A stretch of 63,034 nt of DNA, counting the filler, from Octopus bimaculoides (Eukaryota), in the NCBI RefSeq assembly GCF_001194135.2. It is 4 parts of 3 records of this genome, joined end to end, with 100 filler letters (N's around TTAATTAATTAA, not from the genome) between each part and the next. Parts side by side here need not be neighbours in the genome. Positions count along the whole stretch, not along the records: positions 10,539 to 42,406 come from NC_068981.1; 3 more parts are not named here. The stretch is one strand, 5' to 3'. This document shows, piece after piece, positions 18,380 to 41,636 of the stretch (position 1 is the first letter of the stretch; every line of letters begins with the position of its first letter). The notes beneath the pieces are model-generated. The model saw only the letters and a list, made by a program, of their open reading frames with translations. It was not told the origin of the DNA and made no database searches. A program made the position numbers and the translations under genes.

Positions 18380-19195
18380 CCTACATGAACTTCTAACTTG
18401 TTGTCTCTTGAGGTCTCTGGGTGAGACTTGGATTCAACTTGTACAAATGCAAAACAAAAGTCAAACATAAAATAACAAGTAACTGTAGAATATGTGGAGA
18501 TGGACAAGAAACAATAAATCATGTTATCTCTGGCTGCCCAGTCCTGGCTAATAAGGAATATATTCACAGACTCGACAGAGCTGGGACCTATANNNNNNNN
18601 NNNNNNNNNNNNNNNNNNNNNNNNNNNNNNNNNNNNNNNNNNNNNNNNNNNNNNNNNNNNNNNNNNNNNNNNNNNNNNNNNNNNNNNNNNNNNNNNNNNN
18701 NNNNNNNNNNNNNNNNNNNNNNNNNNNNNNNNNNNNNNNNNNNNNNNNNNNNNNNNNNNNNNNNNNNNNNNNNNNNNNNNNNNNNNNNNNNNNNNNNNNN
18801 NNNNNNNNNNNNNNNNNNNNNNNNNNNNNNNNNNNNNNNNNNNNNNNNNNNNNNNNNNNNNNNNNNNNNNNNNNNNNNNNNNNNNNNNNNNNNNNAACTG
18901 GAAATAGAGGTAACTCGAATGTGGAATCTAAAAACAGAAACAATTCCTATCATAGTAGGTGCCTTAGGTATAATAAAAAAAATATTCAGACACATACATA
19001 ACAAAAACACCAGGACTTACAAATATATATAACATACAGAAAATTCCACTACTGGGCACTACACACATCCTACGCAAAACACTTTCAATACAGTAACCAT
19101 AAGAGCATCACAGCAAACCACAGCACATACTCAAGGCACACAGAGCTGCGCTCGGTAGTGAAGTGAAAGCACGTTATAAAAATAAAATTACTGAA
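18377..19195 (+). mobile_element. R4/Dong-like LINE 3' fragment, chimeric: 3'UTR of one subfamily joined to the CCHC/RLE region of another
   Basis: NCRICGDGQETINHVISGCPVLANKEYIHRLD and LEIEVTRMWNLKTETIPIIVGALG; 3'UTR GAGCTGCGCTCGGTAGTGAAGTGAAAGCACG repeated at 20775 and 42938; (AAT)n on both sides. Confidence 0.85.
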
Positions 19196-19227
19196 TAATA
19201 ATAATAATTATTATAATGATAATAATA

Positions 19228-19985: not shown

Positions 19986-20002
19986 CTTTAAAAATAATAA
20001 TA

Positions 20003-20108
<106 letters not shown>

Positions 20109-20110
20109 TG

Positions 20111-20165
<55 letters not shown>

Positions 20166-20510
20166 TAANNNNNNNNNNNNNNNNNNNNNNNNNNNNNNNN
20201 NNNNNNNNNNNNNNNNNNNNNNNNNNNNNNNNNNNNNNNNNNNNNNNNNNNNNNNNNNNNNNNNNNNNNNNNNNNNNNNNNNNNNNNNNNNNNNNNNNNN
20301 NNNNNNNNNNNNNNNNNNNNNNNNNNNNNNNNNNNNNNNNNNNNNNNNNNNNNNNNNNNNNNNNNNNNNNNNNNNNNNNNNNNNNNNNNNNNNNNNNNNN
20401 NNNNNNNNNNNNNNNNNNNNNNNNNNNNNNNNNNNNNNNNNNNNNNNNNNNNNNNNNNNNNNNNNNNNNNNNNNNNNNNNNNNNNNNNNNNNNNNNNNNN
20501 NNNNNNNNNC

Positions 20511-20850
20511 GACAGAGCTGGGACCTATATACACTGGAAGCTATGCCAACACTATGGAATAACAACAGAAACAATTCCTATCATAGTAGGTGCCTTAGGT
20601 ATAATTAAAAAAATATTCAGACCAATACATAACAAAAACACCAGGACTTACAAATATATATAACATGCAGAAAATTGCACTACTGGGCACTGCATACATC
20701 CTACGCAACACACTTTCAATTCAGTAACAATAAGAGCACCACAGCAAACCACAGCACATACCCAAGGCGCACAGAGCTGCGCTCGGTAATGAAGTGAAAG
20801 CACGTTATAAAAATAAAACTACTGAACAATAATAATTATAATAATAATAA
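20511..20850 (+). mobile_element. R4/Dong-like LINE 3' end with internal deletion and (AAT)n tail
   Basis: Near-identical to 18575-18592 and 18938-19195. Confidence 0.85.
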
Positions 20851-20859
20851 TAACTGTAA

Positions 20860-21884: not shown

Positions 21885-23960
21885 TTACCGTACAAAATTA
21901 TGATCTAAATAGGCGACCGTTGTAAAAAGTGGACATCCTCTACTACTACTATATATTTTCCTAGTGAAATGCCTATCTATATACGATCTCGATGACCCTA
22001 AACTGTTGGTCCACGTCCACACGGGCGCATTAGACAAATCTCGTACCTGTAATCTCGGTACCTGTAAGACAGTTGGAACTGGCTGATCAGGTGCTTCAGG
22101 CTTTTGCAACCTCCGCATCTATCAGGCACTCCCACAAAATCCCAGCCTTGATCAGTCGCACACTAACAGATGCACCAAGAAAATCTACCTGACGACTAAA
22201 TAAATCCAGCTGTTTGGCTTCAGTAGGGCCGTATACGGCTACCAGTCTCATTGTACCACTTTCACTATTGCTCACGTTCAGGATCACCAACTTCCCGTCC
22301 AAGTCCCGGAAGAGCGACCTTACCTCGTGATCCAGTTCTTTCCTTCAACAGCACAGCCAATCCACCTCCATACCCGGCCGAGTAACAGATGCACATATCC
22401 GATAATCGTCGAAGATAGGGGCCAGTGCCCGTGTATTGGAAATCCTGGTTTCACTGACAGTAATTACATCCAATTCTAAAGATTTGAGGTCGTTGAGAAG
22501 GCACCCTTGCTTACAGGGCGACCCCAGTCCCCGAACATTAAAAAATCCTACTCTTAAAATGACCATGTTGGTAAGTTAAAGAGAGAAGGGAAAGGTTTAC
22601 TTACATCCCAGTGTCTTGTAAAGGTCGTGTGGGTCGACATCTGTAATTCGTGGGATGTCTTTTGGGAACCCTTTTAGGTGTCACGATGTGGGTCTCACAT
22701 TCGCGGTGTCCACGTCCCCAGGAAACAATCTCGAATTATTGTGTAGGAATCGAGCGACATTCGCACTAGAAGCAAATCTCCCTCTGTTTCAAATTCAATG
22801 TTTTGTGTTACGAGAGCCATGAGTACGAAGTTGGGTCCTTTGTGTTGATTTTGTTTTCATAAGTGTGCTTGAATACAGTGTGGTGGTTTGTTGTTGCTGT
22901 TTCGGTTGTGTCTGTGTTTGCTGTGAGTGTGATATCTGCAGTTTTAGATGTGTGTATGAGTGTTTATTCTTGTGTCTGTTTAGGGTGTTTGCGTTTGGGG
23001 GATTCGGTTGATAGTGATGGTGTTGGTTGTGTTAGTGTTGTTAGAGAGATGCTTGTGTGGGTGATGTTTGTATTTTTTATTGTGAGTGTTGTTAGGCGTT
23101 GTTGAGTTTTTCTTTTCCGTGTTTTTTTTTTATTTTGCTGTTTCGGACCTTTTGGTTTTCCTTCATCTTGATTACTGAAAAATGAGGGCATCTGTAGCTG
23201 TAAGTGTGTCTGTGGGTATGTTTATATTCTTGTTTATGTTGGTATTTTGTTTGGTGTGAGTGGGTGCTATAGGTTCCCTCATTTCTCCCTACAGTGGTTA
23301 ATGTCTTTGGTGATTCGTTTGTTGCCGCTGGTGGTTTTGACGGTACTGGTGCCGTTTGTGGTCCTCGTCCCAGGGTAGTCAGCAGTGGAGGCCTTTGACC
23401 CTTTGCCCCTTTTACTATTTTGGGGCAGCAAACTCTCAGATGAGTAGTTTTCCCAAAAGCGATACAATGCGTCCTTTTGTCAATCCCGGACCAGTCTTCC
23501 CTAGAAGCTATTGTCACCTCTATCGGGACGGTATCCATCCTTTCCAGAATTATGCATTCCAGAAGCCACCACATATCAACTCCGGGTGGGATCCTAGGAA
23601 TGCAGACACGTGAAGTACCTATCCTCATTTGGGAGGGTACATATTTTGCTGGTTTTCAAGGGGTCATTGAATGTTTCGCAGCCAGAACTTCTGACTTAAA
23701 TAGCACCGAAATGGTACCGTAGTGTTTTCCCCTTGCTATGTTCTCTGTGTTATCTCTGATGCACCTCAGTGCCGCTTCAATATGTACTTGGGCCATAAAA
23801 GCCGCTCGTCTCGTCTCTGCTGAGATATATCTGAAAATCACCCACTGCTCTGATGGAATAGTTAGGTTGAGCAATGTTTGTTCTTGTTTATTTAGTTTTC
23901 ATGCCTGGATCAACATTTCATCTCTATTTGTGAGGCCCACTGTAAAGCGTAGCGTCTTTT
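21885..23960 (-). mobile_element. L1/Tx1-like LINE 5' half: ORF1 and the whole APE endonuclease of ORF2, frameshifted, RT absent
   Basis: ORF2 start MVILRVGFFNVRGLG...DVITVSETR, LVAVYGP, WTWTNS...RSYIDR...LDHNFV (APE motifs); upstream ORF1-like frames at about 22600-23874. Confidence 0.85.
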
Positions 23961-25136: not shown

Positions 25137-25297
25137 GGTGAATAAATAAATAAATAAGTGAAACAGAAGCTTCAATATAGGACGAATCACGTAGTATCTT
25201 GATCTGTGAAAAATTTCACTCAAATTCGCTCAGGTTACATCCAACCGCCTTATCGCATTAACAATATCATTTATGCAGACATATTGTGATATACAAA

Positions 25298-25488
25298 GGC
25301 GGTGAGATGGCATAAACTTTAGCACGCAGCGCGTAATACTTAGCGGTATTTCTTCTGTCTTTACGTTCTAAGTTCCGACGAGGTTGATTTTGACTTTCAT
25401 ACTTAAGGGGTTGACAAATTAAGTAGTAGTTGCGTACTGGGTCGATGTAATCCACTGCCCCTCCCGCATTGGGTCCAGATTAGAAAGA
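25298..25488 (+). mobile_element. SINE family B, full length, with a 17-bp TSD
   Basis: TSD ATATTGTGATATACAAA at 25281-25297 and 25489-25505; tRNA-like head GGCGGTGAGATGGC; Meta-like core. Confidence 0.9.
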
Positions 25489-25639: not shown

Positions 25640-25700
<61 letters not shown>

Positions 25701-25810
25701 AACAACAACAACAACAACTGCCGCTGCTATTATTAAAACTACTTCTGATGATAATGATACTACTACTACTACTACTGCTACTACTACTACTACTAATGCT
25801 GCTTCTGCTG
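25628..25810 (+). repeat. (ACT)n/(AAC)n microsatellite cluster; similar (GGT)n and (ACT)n tracts at 27080-27395
   Basis: Read directly. Confidence 0.95.
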
Positions 25811-27278
25811 TTATATTAGTGCAAGAGAAACATGTTGACAACTTGATGTTTACTTCAGTCTCACTATCCTAGTTAATTTTCCTATAAGCACTCCACCTTC
25901 AATGCATACGATACCAAACATCATTGACGCTGCTGATTAGTAACATTGTCATTTAGGCTGTTGACAGTAATGCTGCCGCTGCTGCTGCTGCTGCTGAAGA
26001 TGATGATGACGATCCTGATGTTGATCGTGATGACTATTCTACTAGTGCTCCCGGTACCACAATTACTGTCATTTCTACTACTACAATCTCTCCAAGTATT
26101 GCTGTCGCTATTACTACGTCACTGATTGCTGATTTATTGCTTCTGCTTTTCTGCAGTAATTCTTACTAGCACGATATCACTTCCAGTTTTTCAGAAGCTA
26201 CATAATTTAAAAACTGTTGAGACTAGAGTAACTGTTGATACTGTTATTGAATGTAGGCAAACTAGCCGAGACTACAATACGTCTCACAAATATTATAATA
26301 TATTTACTTTCATTCCCTGACGCTCTGATTTCAAATCTTACCGAGTTCAATGCTGCTGTCTACCTCTGTGTTCAAAGCGTATAATGTGTGGAAAGAGAAC
26401 CTGTGAGACTTCTTTCCTATATCCAAATGAAGAAATGGAGGAAATTTAAACGATTAATTCTCTCCAGTGACCAAAATTTGTCTTTGTGTCTGTGTAAGAA
26501 ATTATCAAGTACAGTGAGTTGGACGTTAGTTGCTACAGTGATGCACAAAAATGTGGTGTCGTACTTTACTGGCTCGAATTCTGCTTAGCTCAACTTTACC
26601 TGCAGCACTATGAATTATGATCTCAAACTAGCACTAGGTCGATGATTATGATTACACTTTTCTCTTCGAAATTACTAGTCTAAAGATTAGAAGCAATGAC
26701 GTCTACTACAGAGTCATTACAATTTTGTAAAAAAGAAAAGAGTATTTCTAGTTTAATCACATAAAGTATCAATGAAGTACAGAGGTTAATTATATTGACT
26801 AGCAGCCTCCATTGCTGGAACTGTTGCTTAAATTAGAAAAGGATAACGGTAAGTAAGTAGAATATTAAGAGATTTAAAAAAAAAAAAAATGTTGCTCTTC
26901 ATTCAGCATTTTATATTATGATTTTAAATCACACCAGGTCAACTTTGCCTTCATCCTTTCACAGCTGATAGGATAAAGTACCATTTACACAATGGGGCGT
27001 TTGCATCGACTAACCCATTTCCGCACAATAGCTGGACTTGTGCCTATATTACGAATAAGTAATAACAGTAGTAAGGAAAATAGTAGTAGTAGTAGTAGTA
27101 ATGGTGGTGGTGGTGGTGGTGGTTGTGGTAGTGGTGGTGGTGGTGGTAGTGGTAGCGGTGGTGTTGGTATTGGTGGTGGTTGAATTTCTACGTTTCTAAT
27201 TTTCAATGCAATCCACTACTACTACTACTACTACAAATACTACTACTACTACTGCTGCTGCTGCTACTACCACTACTT

Positions 27279-27325
<47 letters not shown>

Positions 27326-27338
27326 GATGCTGCTGCTG

Positions 27339-27397
<59 letters not shown>

Positions 27398-29007: not shown

Positions 29008-29303
29008 CTTACAGTTGTTTCAGTTAATACCCCAAGAATATTAAGTAAATGTTAAATATATGTGACCTTAGTGTAATATCTTCAGATGGAACAAATATAC
29101 CCTTGGAATGTGAGATGAAGTGTTTTGTTCAAGAACACAACGGTCCTTCCNNNNNNNNNNCTTACAGTTGTTTCAGTTAATACCCCAAGAATATTAAGTA
29201 AATGTTAAATATATGTGACCTTAGTGTAATATCTTCAGATGGAACAAATATACCCTTGGAATGTGAGATGAAGTGTTTTGTTCAAGAACACAACGGTCCT
29301 TCC
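29008..29303. other. 143-bp exact duplication across a 10-N gap (29008-29150 = 29161-29303), probably an unmerged contig overlap
   Basis: Identical sequence on both sides of a fixed 10-N spacer. Confidence 0.85.
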
Positions 29304-32029: not shown

Positions 32030-33308
32030 TGTGCGTGTGTGTGAGTGCACGTGTATGCTAGTTGCGTGCAGTGTATTTGTATATTATGCGCACCACGGAT
32101 AACATAAAAATACGCTAATCGCAACCAGCATACACACACTCTCTCACACACACACTGTGCCAATTTTTATACTCTGCTGCCTTCAAAGGCCTCATCTTCT
32201 ATCTTTCTCCCAAGATCGAACTTTGCTTAGGAGAGACAATCATAATATCGCAGCATCCACTCGGATAATACCAATGTTGGTTTTTGACTTCTAATTTAGT
32301 TTAAAAGTATACATACATAATACAAATACCACATAATAAGAAACCCATAAAATGACTTATTTTATAACTATCAATGTTGCTCAGTCTTTCACAGATCTCG
32401 ATATAAATTACCTGACATCTCGGGATCCAGAATAAACCTCTCTACCGTCATACTTCACATAAAAAACATATTTTATATCAATACCTCTTAATAAAAAAAA
32501 TAAAAAGTTAAAAGCGAATTTCAATTTAAACAATTAGTTGTTTTTCGTTTTATCAACATGTTTGGAACGGCAAACTAAATGCACTGTATTTGGTTAATAC
32601 ATTTGAGCATTTGCAAATACAGGAGTATGAAAGATAAGGTAAACTTTCCTCTACTGCAAATTCAGATATTGTAAATATCTAATTCTGTACGAGATGCACC
32701 TGGAGAGCCTATGAATGTTCCTTCTGAAAAGTATGTTCATAACAATTAATAGGAAATAGACTCCTCATCTATGATTGGAAGCCTCGAGGTCTCCAAACAT
32801 TATAAATAATATACATAACACTCTTTATAAGACGTATTATCTATTCATCTTTTATGAATCCGCATAGCTGCATGCGAAGTATAATTCTTTCGTTTTTGCG
32901 ATGAGAAAATAGCCTAATTATTTAAGCAAATATTTAGTCATCTTGATGGATTATAGTAACGACAGCTAAATTTTATAAGTGGATTATACAAACCAAAAAA
33001 TTAATTGTCAGCATATATGTACATAATTCACACATGTAAACATTGAATATGTAACCAATCGCTGCTAAACACTCATCCCGTTTAATCAACGCTATTGATT
33101 TAAACTATCACTAAATAACAAACATAAAACATGCTGGAATCATGTATATTTACACAATAAAACCATATAATTTTCGTTTACTCCAATTACCACACAGTCA
33201 TCTAACTCCGTTTGCCATTTATTTCTATATCTCCCACATAACATGCTTATGTAAAAACAAAATTTAATAAAAAAACAAAGCCAGTTAAATTAAGTAAAAT
33301 GTATATTT

Positions 33309-33365
33309 ACATACCAATAGTAAATTCTTTATGATTCTTACCTGGAAAGACAAAAGAAATAAAAA
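33309..33365 (-). other. Abutting 3' and 5' splice signals (recursive splice site candidate) with a 27-nt cryptic exon or microexon at 33341-33315
   Basis: Minus strand: TTTTTATTTCTTTTGTCTTTCCAG|GTAAGAATCATAAAGAATTTACTATTG|GTATGT, in unique AT-rich DNA. Confidence 0.55.
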
Positions 33366-33744
33366 CTGTATTTAATATATTTGGCAACGTATAAATATTG
33401 ACTTAACATTGTAAAGTAAAAACAAAAATAATCGGTGTATTCCTCTCAAAATCCCACATTTCCAATATACAACGTATAAAATGCATTTTTTTTTTTTTAC
33501 ATATGCGACCCATGGAACGCAATTATGTGCTTAATAATTTTGTCTTAGCTGCTATTGACAGCCTATTTTCTTCACAAAAATGATCGATAAAATTCTGTTT
33601 CTTTACTATATCGCACAAAGAAAACAATAGAGTGCAAATACCCTCTGCTCTGGGATTCCTGAAAATACAGCCCCACACTTCTCGGCAAAAAATAAANNNN
33701 NNNNNNATATAACATATATACATACACATGTATGTGTGTGTGTA

Positions 33745-35327: not shown

Positions 35328-36851
35328 GAGTAGAGGCCATAATGTAAGGATCAGTAAGAACAAGTGTATTGAAATATTTATTATAGAAGATTAACAAAAC
35401 GTTGAGACTAGATATTTTACACATATTTAGATTTATCTAATATCTATCTTTCATGATTGGAATAAATATTTCGTAAGTTATGAGATAAACAAATTATCTT
35501 CCAAACTGCAACGGCCAGAATTTCAGAGTCACTTAGAAAATCAATGAAAAATGGAACAAGAACAAAAACGGTACTCTTAGTATTAATATTTTGTGAACAT
35601 CTCTTTACTATCAATGACTTCCTGACATCCGTTACCACAGGACTGAACTAATTTCTTGCAAAACTATGGAGTAATACTGTTCCATTTGTTTTTCAATAAT
35701 TCCAAGTGTTCAACTTGGTTCTTTGGATTACTCCTTCGCGGTCCATCTTCACAAATATTCCAAATGTTTTCAATAAGTTTGAAATCAGGATTTTCAGGTG
35801 GCTTGTCCATGAAATCAACCCCTTAATTACTCAAAAAATCTTTGACTCTCTTCGCAGGTGCGATAGAGTGCTTTGTGCTACAGGAAGATAAGAGGTTGAA
35901 TTGATGAGGATCGGAGATGTGGAAGGGCGTACTATCTAAGAATCGGCTTGTAGATTTCAGCATTGACAGTCTCTTGTAGGCAAATACGTGGTTAAGGTCT
36001 AGCAGCAGGGAACACACCCCATAGCATTTCACTGCCTCCTCCATATTTCAGTGTCTTCTTCATACATGCACGACATAACCTTTCGCTACTTGTTCGTCGG
36101 ACTTATGTCCCACCATCGGAACCAATCACATTAGACATTGATTCATCGCTAAAATGAACCTGCATCCACTAATCTTTTGTCCAAACCACAAGTTCGTGAA
36201 CGAAACGAATACGGGCTCTTTGATTCTTCTTGGAGATTTTTTTGTGGGTTTCTTTGCCGGTGTTCGTTGACATCGGAAGTGGAGCTTCGCGGGATATCTC
36301 AGCAGCACTCTTAAACCGGCCCTTCAGTGACATTCTAACCATAATACGAGCCTGTCTTGGTGACCTATTACGAAGTCTATTGGTTTGGGGTTTAGCATCT
36401 GTCGAGCTACAATTCGTTGCACAATACTTCTAGACCTTCCTACAGTAGTTGACCGTTTAGTGATGGCACGCAATCCTTTGATTTTCATTACAAGACAGAC
36501 ACGAGTCGTCTCTCACAACGCGCCACGTTGAGTGTTGAATATTCCACTAATGTAAGATCATAAGAAGTTGCTGTTAGCTTATAAACAGTCTTCTAAACAA
36601 CAAATACCTCGGTTAGTACATTTTTTTCTAAGTGGCCCTTAACTTTTAGCCCCTGTAATTTGGAAGATTGTTTCTTTCTTTCCCCATAACTTAATAAATA
36701 TTTCTTCCATTCTCTTGAAATTTTCAAGAAAGATAGATATTAAATATATATATAAATATGTGTAAAATAACTAGTCTCAACGTGTAATTCTTCTAAAATA
36801 ACTATTTCAATGGAGTTGTTCTGACTGACCCTTATATTCTGGCCGCTACAG
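35328..36851 (-). mobile_element. Full-length but dead Tc1-type transposon with IR/DR long TIRs of about 215-230 bp
   Basis: Arms 35328-35540 and 36624-36851 are reverse complements, each with outer and inner direct repeats (GGCCAGAAT..AGGGTCA..AGAA). Internal frames give VHFSDES, KYGGGS..LWG, and PENPDFKLIENIW...KEMFTKY*. Left TA intact. Confidence 0.85.
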
Positions 36852-38286: not shown

Positions 38287-38301
38287 TTCATCATCGTCAT
38301 A

Positions 38302-38425
38302 GGTGTTGAGCTGGCAGAAGCGTTAGCTCGCTGGAAGAAATGCTTAGCGGTATTTGCTACGTCCTGAGTTCAAATTCCGACGAGGTCAACTTTACTTTTT
38401 ATCTTTTCGGGGATCGATAAATTAA
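38302..38425 (+). mobile_element. SINE family B, 5' part
   Basis: GAGCTGGCAGAAGCGTTAGC...GAGTTCAAATTCCGACGAGGTCAAC...GATCGATAAATTAAG. Confidence 0.75.
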
Positions 38426-40003
38426 GAACAAATACAACCACTACTAGGCAGCAAAGTCTATATTTGTTGTATCACCTTGAAATTTTTCTATGACAACTAA
38501 CACAAGATAGTTTTTGTGTTGTATGCGTACATAGTTAAGACTAAAATATGTGAAGACAAAATCATATTCAACATGAAAATATATAATCGGCAAAAAGTGC
38601 ATTAGTCATTATTAGCCGAATTTGGAAGATAAATCAGTATGATGATGCTTTATATAAATATTTATGAAAATACAAATGAAGATTTATAGGAAAGCAACGA
38701 CAGAAAAAGTAGCTCCAGGGCCATATTCATATTTATGTGTTTGTAATAAGTGACTATATTTGATACATTGTACAACAGTTATGATTTCTTCTATGTCTTC
38801 GCCTAATATATTGTCCGTGCTTACATTTACAGAAACGAAATTACTACTGGATTACTATAAATCCCCATATTAGCATTATTTGTTTCTTTATCGAGTATAC
38901 ATTTTACGAAATGGCTCGTAGACATACAATTTATAACTGCTTTGTGGTGACATTGTATTCAGGCATTGAAAAGTAGACAATGTTCGTGATAATAATCAAA
39001 TATATTTGGGTGGGGGGCAATATAAGCCACCATATTCCCAAACAGCTTTGCAACGATAATTTCAAGAAAGCATTTGCGGACTATATATTTTCATCATTTA
39101 ACCATCAGGCACTTGTCAACGTTTTATTTAATAACCTCGGCATTTATTCCATGACAAGCTTAGCATAGATAAGAATTTAAAGTTTTGTAGGTTCCTGGGT
39201 AACTTGCTATCCACATCACATCTCATTCCTTGTACAATTATTTCGTTTACAATTGAGAGAATATAGATATGTGTTAATACGTTTTCGAAAAGTAATATAA
39301 TAGCATAACTAACACTGGTTTATTCAAGTATGCGACCCGATATCTATTCCTATTTAAAGTCATTTCCCTGTGAAGTTTGGCGTATTCCCTTTTTATGACT
39401 AAATCTTGCCTTACAAAGGAAACATGTGAGACATTTTGCATCGTTACCTAATGACTGCAATAAATAGATGTGATATCATACTTAACATAGATACAAACTG
39501 TTCAGGCAAGATACCGTAAACTTAGTCCGAGATAAAATGTTATGTACATGTGTTAGATATAACGTCTATAGGAGGGAAAAAAGAAATCGACGCCACAAAG
39601 TATAAGGAGAACATCAGATTCATATCAACCTCGTTCGAAGGTGACCAAAAGATGTGCTGCAACTATATGCCTGTACAGAGTATATTATCTACTATATCCG
39701 GAAGTGGTAGTAATACTTGTAGAGATGTTGCAAATAGTTGCCGAGCTGAATTTAAATAAATCTAAAAAAACTCCTAGTTTTACATATTTGAATTAGTATT
39801 AAATTTCGAGACAGCCTGAGAACCATTCGCAATATCGCTGAATATATAGTTCCTTATTTTATACATAGCAGGCACCATATTTCGTCTGGTCATGTAGCTA
39901 CATGTGTTAGTGAGTAGTGCACGTATTCTGCAAGCCCAGAATGATTGCTCGTCTCCTACGAATATACACGCCCCCCCACTCATTCTCATACACACACACA
40001 CAC

Positions 40004-41478: not shown

Positions 41479-41633
41479 GGAGGCAAGCTAACAGAATCGT
41501 TAGCACGCCGCGCGAAATACGTAGTCGTATTTCGTCTGTCTTTACGTTCGGAATTCAAATTCCGCCGAGGTCGATTTTGCCTTCCATCATTTTGGGGTCG
41601 ATAAAGTAAGTACCAGATGCATACTGGTGTCGA

Positions 41634-41636
<3 letters not shown>
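41479..41636 (+). mobile_element. SINE family B
   Basis: Matches the 62675-62900 head and core. Confidence 0.8.

What the first reader, a model, noticed from the sequence alone, without database searches (positions are those of the whole stretch)
33309..33370. Candidate recursive splice site with a 27-nt cryptic exon, or a neural-type microexon, on the minus strand
Seen: a 21-nt pyrimidine-rich tract, then CAG, immediately followed by a near-consensus donor GTAAGA (junction 33342/33341). A second good donor TTG|GTATGT lies exactly 27 nt downstream. The 27-mer is stop-free in two frames (VRIIKNLLL; KNHKEFTI). It lies in kilobases of unique, transposon-poor AT-rich DNA. Established: AG|GTAAG ratchet points with short cryptic RS-exons remove very long introns in Drosophila and vertebrates, and 3-27-nt frame-preserving microexons form a neural splicing programme. 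Inference: much of this window may be a giant intron of a minus-strand gene that is spliced recursively. I do not know of this being characterised in cephalopods.
Basis: partly seen in the sequence, partly recalled or inferred. Interest (0 to 1): 0.7.

Follow-up and report, generated by a model that had tools for sequence, protein, structure and literature searches.

The report
Splice-site look-alike, function unproven
The acceptor-plus-donor motif is really there and looks like a textbook recursive splice site, but nothing available here shows that it lies in a transcribed intron, and a genome this size should hold hundreds to thousands of such motifs by chance.

Summary
On the minus strand there is a 21-nt tract with 19 pyrimidines, then CAG|GTAAGA (junction 33342/33341). 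A 27-nt stretch open in two frames follows, then TTG|GTATGT. It ranks first of 147 AG|GT sites in the piece. It also meets every sequence-level criterion published for fly ratchet points, including TT at -5/-6.

The function could not be tested. I found no exon, gene, non-coding RNA or strand signal in the 32-kb piece, and no orthologous or RNA data were reachable.

Chance gives about 0.03-0.11 such acceptor/donor cores per piece. The second donor is of a common class, so it adds little. Scaled to an assumed genome of about 2.7 Gb, that is roughly 500-2,500 chance composites. High-confidence recursive sites in a genome of similar size (human) number only tens to about a hundred.

The features of neural microexons (nearby UGC, long AG-free zone, UCUC tract, CUAAY branch point) are absent.

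My estimates: a chance splice-site look-alike about 0.7; a real recursive site with a suppressed 27-nt cryptic exon about 0.14; an included microexon about 0.03. It is a legitimate candidate, not a finding. Interest is low.

The parts
33345..33365 (-). Pyrimidine-rich tract, 19 of 21 Y (18 of the 20 nt before CAG), with TT at -5/-6
   Evidence: It is the only YAG in the piece with >=18/20 Y upstream.
33359..33363 (-). Only branch-point-like pentamer near the acceptor: TTTAT (yUnAy), with its A at -19. This is a weak match.
   Evidence: There is no CURAY or CUAAY within 150 nt upstream.
33342..33344 (-). CAG acceptor-like trinucleotide; junction 33342/33341
33336..33341 (-). GTAAGA donor-like hexamer directly after the AG (the ratchet-point arrangement)
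33315..33341 (-). 27-nt candidate cryptic recursive exon or microexon, open in frames 0 and 2
33309..33314 (-). Second donor-like hexamer GTATGT, preceded by TTG; 6 of 9 matches to MAG|GTRAGT

Best explanation
The site is most likely a chance juxtaposition of an acceptor-like and a donor-like motif in AT-rich, T-tract-rich, microsatellite- and repeat-laden non-coding DNA. In other words, it is a pseudo splice site or pseudo-exon with no demonstrated use.

The sequence would be competent. If a minus-strand pre-mRNA runs through it, the spliceosome could define the 27-nt unit by exon definition and join the upstream exon to 33341. It could then re-splice from the rebuilt donor xAG|GTAAGA. That donor pairs better with U1 than TTG|GTATGT does, so the 27 nt would be removed rather than included.

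Shown here: the motif, its rank in the piece and its chance frequency. Inferred: everything about use.
For: - The number of AGGTRAG cores is at expectation: 5 observed against 3-5 expected.
- Core + tract is expected 0.03-0.11 times per 30-kb piece from the real frequency of Y-rich windows. Block shuffles give 0.001-0.04, depending on the Y threshold.
- A second donor of this class occurs 4-9 times per kb.
- Scaled to an assumed genome of about 2.7 Gb, this gives roughly 500-2,500 chance composites.
- High-confidence human recursive sites number 5, 19 and 100 in three studies (PMC10156609).
- No exon-like ORF anywhere in the piece matches a known protein.
- The longest ORF lies in a dispersed repeat.
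- No RNA gene was found.
- There is no consistent strand signal: AATAAA occurs 50 times on + and 39 on -, and GTRAGT 19 on + and 10 on -.
- There is no CURAY branch point within 150 nt upstream.
Against: - It is the best of 147 AG|GT sites in the piece and the only YAG with >=18/20 Y upstream.
- It has TT at -5/-6, as 99.5% of fly ratchet points do.
- GTAAGA is the very hexamer at the 5' end of the Ubx recursive microexons.
- A downstream donor sits at a distance fitting a short cryptic exon.
- The rebuilt donor would be stronger than the exon's own donor, as in known ratchet points: -9.5 to -12.3 against -6.9 kcal/mol with a typical exon end.
- Block shuffles put the full composite at 0.001-0.005 per piece or less.
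- If cephalopods use recursive splicing as much as flies do, the posterior for a real site would be much higher.
Confidence: 0.72

Rival explanations
1. It is a genuine intronic ratchet point. The piece would lie in a long intron of a minus-strand gene. The 27-nt unit is recognised by exon definition and the upstream exon is joined to 33341. The rebuilt donor then outcompetes TTG|GTATGT, so the cryptic exon leaves with the rest of the intron ('zero-nucleotide' recursive splicing).
For: - All sequence-level criteria are met: AG|GTAAG, a prominent pyrimidine tract, TT at -5/-6, and a short downstream unit with its own donor.
- The predicted order of donor strength is right when the upstream exon ends in AG.
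- It is the top-ranked AG|GT site in the piece.
- No exon was found within at least 9 kb upstream or 22 kb downstream, which is compatible with a very long intron.
Against: - There is no evidence of a host gene, of minus-strand transcription or of conservation.
- Chance composites probably outnumber real sites several-fold in a genome of this size.
- The branch-point candidate is weak.
- An absence of exons fits intergenic DNA equally well.
Confidence: 0.14
2. It is a 27-nt frame-preserving microexon that is included in mRNA, neural or otherwise, and encodes VRIIKNLLL or KNHKEFTI.
For: The length is 27 nt. Two frames are open, and a strong acceptor-like and a usable donor-like site flank it.
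Against: - The cis code of eMIC-dependent microexons is missing. The nearest UGC is at -45, an AG sits at -26 so the AG-free zone is short, and there is no UCUC and no CUAAY (PMC8797185).
- A GTAAGA at the exon's first base would favour its removal.
- No flanking coding exons were detected.
- The peptide is AT-codon-biased, like the surrounding non-coding DNA.
Confidence: 0.03
3. It is the acceptor of a cryptic or alternative last exon. Splicing into 33341 would be followed by cleavage at a downstream poly(A) signal. U1 bound at the adjacent donors would normally repress this.
For: ATTAAA lies 74 nt and AATAAA 119 nt downstream of the junction on the minus strand. Cryptic last exons in long introns are a known class (PMC7997972, listed).
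Against: AATAAA occurs 89 times in the piece, so its presence says nothing. There is no transcript evidence.
Confidence: 0.03

Closest known systems
Drosophila intronic ratchet points with cryptic RS-exons (kuz, Bx and more than 500 others; Duff 2015, Joseph 2018/2021, Pai 2018)
   Same: - A juxtaposed acceptor and donor, AG|GTAAG.
- A long pyrimidine tract with TT at -5/-6.
- A short downstream unit ending in its own, weaker donor.
   Different: The fly sites are defined by junction reads, sawtooth coverage, lariats and ultraconservation, inside introns longer than 11 kb. None of that is known here. The cryptic unit is 27 nt against about 50 nt in flies.
Ubx microexons mI/mII (recursively spliced expressed exons)
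   Same: A short exon-like unit that starts with GTAAGA directly after an acceptor AG.
   Different: The Ubx exons are 51 nt, are included in some isoforms and were shown by experiment. Here there is no host gene or transcript.
Vertebrate RS-exons in long neuronal introns (Sibley 2015; Blazquez 2018)
   Same: The exon-definition logic: a cryptic exon whose 5' end rebuilds a donor, with competition between the two donors deciding inclusion.
   Different: Only a handful to about 100 high-confidence sites are known in a 3-Gb genome. Those sites sit in introns of hundreds of kb and are conserved. This is not testable here.
Pseudoexons or decoy splice sites in long introns (for example the DMD pseudoexons, PMC7175933)
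   Same: An acceptor-like and a donor-like site a short distance apart in deep non-coding DNA, with no known use.
   Different: Pseudoexons are usually recognised only after a mutation activates them. This one has an unusually good acceptor and a donor at its first base.
eMIC/SRRM4-dependent neural microexons
   Same: A length of 27 nt or less that is a multiple of three.
   Different: It lacks the nearby UGC, the long AG exclusion zone, the UCUC-rich tract and the CUAAY branch point.

Membership tests
Intronic ratchet point (recursive splice site) | [quoted passage not shown] | tested here: met
   CAG|GTAAGA at 33344..33336 on the minus strand
Intronic ratchet point (recursive splice site) | Prominent pyrimidine tract with TT at -5/-6 (99.5% of fly sites) | tested here: met
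   18/20 Y upstream; -5 and -6 are both T (criterion)
Intronic ratchet point (recursive splice site) | Short cryptic RS-exon bounded by a downstream donor | tested here: met
   TTG|GTATGT lies 27 nt downstream. Donors of this class occur 4-9 times per kb, so this criterion discriminates weakly.
Intronic ratchet point (recursive splice site) | Rebuilt ratchet-point donor stronger than the RS-exon donor | tested here: inconclusive
   The U1 duplex is -12.3 or -9.5 kcal/mol if the upstream exon ends in CAG or AAG, against -6.9 for the RS-exon donor. It is only -4.3 with a poor exon end, and the upstream exon is unknown.
Intronic ratchet point (recursive splice site) | Lies on the sense strand of a long (>10 kb) intron of an expressed gene | tested here: inconclusive
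   No exon or gene was found in the 32-kb piece. Strand indicators contradict each other. No annotation was reachable.
Intronic ratchet point (recursive splice site) | Motif conserved across related species well above its flanks | not testable with these tools
   No cephalopod genome collection is on hand. A scan of metagenome contigs for the 24-mer found nothing.
Intronic ratchet point (recursive splice site) | Junction reads into the site, sawtooth intronic coverage, recursive lariats | not testable with these tools
   No RNA-seq data are accessible.
Neural (eMIC-dependent) microexon | Length 3-27 nt, frame-preserving | tested here: met
   27 nt; two open frames
Neural (eMIC-dependent) microexon | UGC motif close to the 3' splice site | tested here: not met
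   The nearest TGC is at -45 (criterion).
Neural (eMIC-dependent) microexon | Long AG exclusion zone, UCUC-rich tract and a strong CUAAY branch point | tested here: not met
   AG at -26; no TCTC and no CTAAY in the 150 nt upstream
Neural (eMIC-dependent) microexon | Sits between coding exons of a gene and is seen in mRNA | tested here: inconclusive
   No coding exon was detected in the piece. There are no transcript data.

The most novel reading that the evidence does not exclude
The site is a working ratchet point in a giant intron of a minus-strand gene. It would be the first recursive splice site, complete with a suppressed 27-nt cryptic exon, described in a cephalopod or any lophotrochozoan. 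That would show that the exon-definition mechanism of recursive splicing is shared by all three bilaterian superclades.
Probability: 0.13. Interest if true: 0.5.

Novelty: not a real feature. Interest (0 to 1): 0.14.

Why it matters
Cephalopod genes have very long introns, and how those introns are removed accurately is unstudied. No paper in the held library treats recursive splicing in cephalopods. A verified ratchet point would extend a mechanism known from flies and vertebrates to a third major animal lineage. It would also give a handle on the splicing of giant neuronal genes in octopus.

One motif match without transcript or conservation data does not do that. The useful outcome here is a clear statement of what the motif is worth, and a cheap genome-wide test that would settle whether such motifs are under selection.

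Tried and rejected
1. Exon hunt. I joined all stop-to-stop ORFs of 40 aa or more, with low-complexity stretches masked, into three long queries covering the whole piece. None gave a hit at E<=1e-3. Caveat: the word prefilter means that only near-identical proteins would have been caught. It also missed a 57%-identical repeat ORF that HMMER found later.
2. Pfam scans of 17 ORFs or ORF joins gave only a sub-threshold zf-RVT match on a LINE tail.
3. I looked up five window ORFs exactly in the assembly collection, hoping for same-locus contigs or annotation. None is on record.
5. A metagenome scan with the 24-mer across the junction found no match.
6. Rfam gave only sub-threshold miRNA models on TG/TA microsatellites, and there is no tRNA, so no intronic RNA gene reveals a host strand.
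7. I tested whether the site lies in a local tandem duplication of about 160 bp. The two stretches (33120-33285 and 33280-33450) share only 80 identical columns of 174 aligned, with two exact words of 12-13 nt. I rejected this as chance in AT-rich DNA.
8. I tried to infer the strand of transcription from composition and from the balance of poly(A) signals and U1 sites. The signals are weak and contradictory.
9. I tried to identify the organism from the Logan run SRR11869391. No paper cites it.

Full report
**What is in the sequence.** Read on the minus strand, 33365..33309 is tttttatttcttttgtctttc CAG|GTAAGAATCATAAAGAATTTACTATTG|GTATGT.
- The tract has 19 pyrimidines in 21 nt, or 18 in the 20 nt before CAG.
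- The junction is 33342/33341.
- The unit between the two GTs is 27 nt (33341..33315).
- Frame 0 reads VRIIKNLLL, frame 2 reads KNHKEFTI, and frame 1 opens with a stop.

**Surroundings.**
- The kilobase around the site has 29% G+C.
- The 800 bp around it has no second copy in the piece.
- The piece (10539-42406) is scaffold-grade. It has six runs of N, one of them a 10-N gap 355 nt upstream of the site.
- It is dense in microsatellites: 41 Tandem Repeats Finder rows, with trinucleotide arrays of up to 60 copies.
- It is not transposon-poor overall. A 1.5-kb element bounded by 229-nt inverted repeats lies at 35330-36849. A SINE-like unit of about 140 bp occurs three times. A LINE 3' tail is present twice at 92% identity, and one copy gives a sub-threshold zf-RVT match.
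- The G+C-richer stretch at 22.9-23.8 kb holds the longest ORF of the piece. It aligns at 69-72% with an unrelated short-read contig and has only short, weak protein relatives, so it is a dispersed repeat and not a gene.
- Within about 2 kb of the site, only microsatellites interrupt unique DNA.

**Is it more than chance?**
- The piece has 5 AGGTRAG cores on the two strands. Markov models of order 1-3 predict 3-5.
- The upstream tract is what stands out. This is the only YAG of 1,601 with at least 18/20 pyrimidines before it. It is also the best of 147 AG|GT sites by a simple composite score.
- The expected number of core + tract per piece depends on the model:
  - Markov models: 0.007-0.04.
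  - Shuffles within 50-200-nt blocks: 0.03-0.04 at >=16/20 Y and 0.001-0.003 at >=18/20 Y.
  - The real frequency of Y-rich windows (0.6-2.3%): 0.03-0.11. I trust this estimate most, because shuffling destroys natural T-runs.
- The second donor adds little. Sites with at least 6/9 matches to MAG|GTRAGT occur 8.7 times per kb. GT[AG][AT]GT occurs 4 times per kb, partly because of TG microsatellites. One within 15-100 nt therefore has a probability of about 0.15-0.5.
- The multiple-of-three length matters only for the microexon reading. Cryptic recursive exons in flies are generally out of frame.
- Per piece, the composite has a probability of roughly 0.005-0.05.
- Scaled to a genome of about 2.7 Gb, this gives some 500-2,500 chance composites. 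The genome size is my own knowledge of octopus genomes, and the origin of the DNA is not verified here.

**Comparison with known recursive sites.**
- Ratchet points are tandem acceptor|donor pairs with a prominent pyrimidine tract.
- 99.5% of them have TT at -5/-6.
- They are ultraconserved.
- They sit in introns of 11 kb or more.
- They are followed by a short cryptic exon (about 50 nt) whose own donor is weaker than the rebuilt one.

This site has the pair, the tract, TT at -5/-6 and the downstream donor. GTAAGA is the same hexamer that starts the Ubx recursive microexons. Predicted U1 pairing is -12.3 or -9.5 kcal/mol for the rebuilt donor when the upstream exon ends in CAG or AAG. It is -6.9 for TTG|GTATGT, but only -4.3 for the rebuilt donor if the exon end is poor.

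If the site is used, the 27 nt should therefore be removed rather than included. One weak point is the branch site. There is no CURAY within 150 nt upstream, only TTTAT with its A at -19.

**Comparison with neural microexons.** The published cis code is a long AG exclusion zone, UGC close to the acceptor, a UCUC-rich tract and a strong CUAAY branch point. Here the nearest UGC is at -45, an AG sits at -26, and there is no UCUC and no CUAAY. Only the length fits.

**Gene context.** This decides the matter and I could not obtain it.
- Three protein searches covered every ORF of 40 aa or more in the piece and returned nothing. Only near-identical proteins would have passed the word filter. An annotated exon of the same species would have been seen, but a diverged one might not.
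- Exact look-ups of five window ORFs found no contig on record.
- Rfam and the tRNA scan found no RNA gene that could betray a host strand.
- Strand statistics are contradictory. There are fewer AATAAA on the minus strand (39 against 50) but also fewer GTRAGT (10 against 19). G exceeds C on the minus strand by about 4%, with no A/T skew.
- No cephalopod genome or RNA-seq collection is among the tools. A metagenome scan for the junction 24-mer found nothing.

An absence of exons fits a giant intron and intergenic DNA equally well.

**Weighing.**
- In flies more than 500 ratchet points are known.
- In human, a genome of comparable size to an octopus's, high-confidence sets hold 5, 19 and 100 sites. 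'Relatively few' have been identified.
- With some 500-2,500 chance composites and perhaps 100 to a few hundred real sites of this quality, a motif-only candidate has a chance of roughly 5-25% of being real.

My estimates are 0.14 for a working ratchet point, 0.03 for an included microexon, 0.03 for a cryptic last-exon acceptor, and about 0.72 for an unused look-alike. The rest covers readings I have not thought of.

**Novelty.** No paper in the held library treats recursive splicing in cephalopods. A 2026 preprint includes Octopus bimaculoides only as an outgroup in a survey of tissue-specific exons. A verified site would be a new member of a known kind in a new lineage. As it stands, it is a candidate that a genome-wide sense/antisense and conservation test, or one stranded total-RNA data set, would confirm or dismiss quickly.

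Noticed in passing
window 29008-29150 and 29161-29303: Two 143-bp stretches are 100% identical and directly flank the 10-N gap at 29151-29160. This looks like an assembly artefact (overlapping contig ends not merged) rather than a biological duplication.
   Followed up: partly
window 35330-36849: An element of about 1.5 kb is bounded by 229-nt inverted repeats at 75% identity (35330-35540 and 36624-36849). It holds broken minus-strand ORFs that recall Tc1/mariner transposase motifs; that resemblance is from memory, since Pfam gave no hit. It is the repeat nearest to the site, about 2 kb upstream on the minus strand.
   Followed up: partly
window 25294-25446, 38298-38429, 41486-41634: Three same-orientation copies of a unit of about 130-145 bp, at 71-77% identity. 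It looks like a SINE family and was not classified.
   Followed up: no
window 18421-19222 and 20555-20853: A LINE 3' tail is present twice on the plus strand at 92% identity, on either side of N gaps. One copy gives a sub-threshold zf-RVT match (E=1e-4, 23 bits against a 27.5-bit cut-off).
   Followed up: partly
window 22949-23790: This G+C-richer stretch (0.43) carries the longest ORF of the piece (187 aa, 23095-23655, minus strand). It aligns at 69-72% with a 1.5-kb short-read contig (L001, run SRR11869391). Its only protein relatives are short, unnamed ORFs from such contigs. It is a dispersed repeat, not a host-gene exon or promoter.
   Followed up: yes
window 33486-33498 (minus strand): A run of 13 A lies about 145 nt upstream of the site on the minus strand. 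It might be the tail of an old retroposed copy. No matching element was found in the piece.
   Followed up: no
window 10539-42406: Microsatellite load is very high: 41 Tandem Repeats Finder rows in 32 kb, including trinucleotide arrays of 52-60 copies (19989-20168, 25640-25795, 27215-27394). These produce all the sub-threshold Rfam 'miRNA' matches.
   Followed up: partly
window 33120-33285 vs 33280-33450: There is weak similarity at a spacing of about 160 bp, with two exact words of 12-13 nt and 80 identical columns of 174 aligned. I judged it chance in AT-rich DNA. The other 'copy' has no AG|GTAAG.
   Followed up: yes
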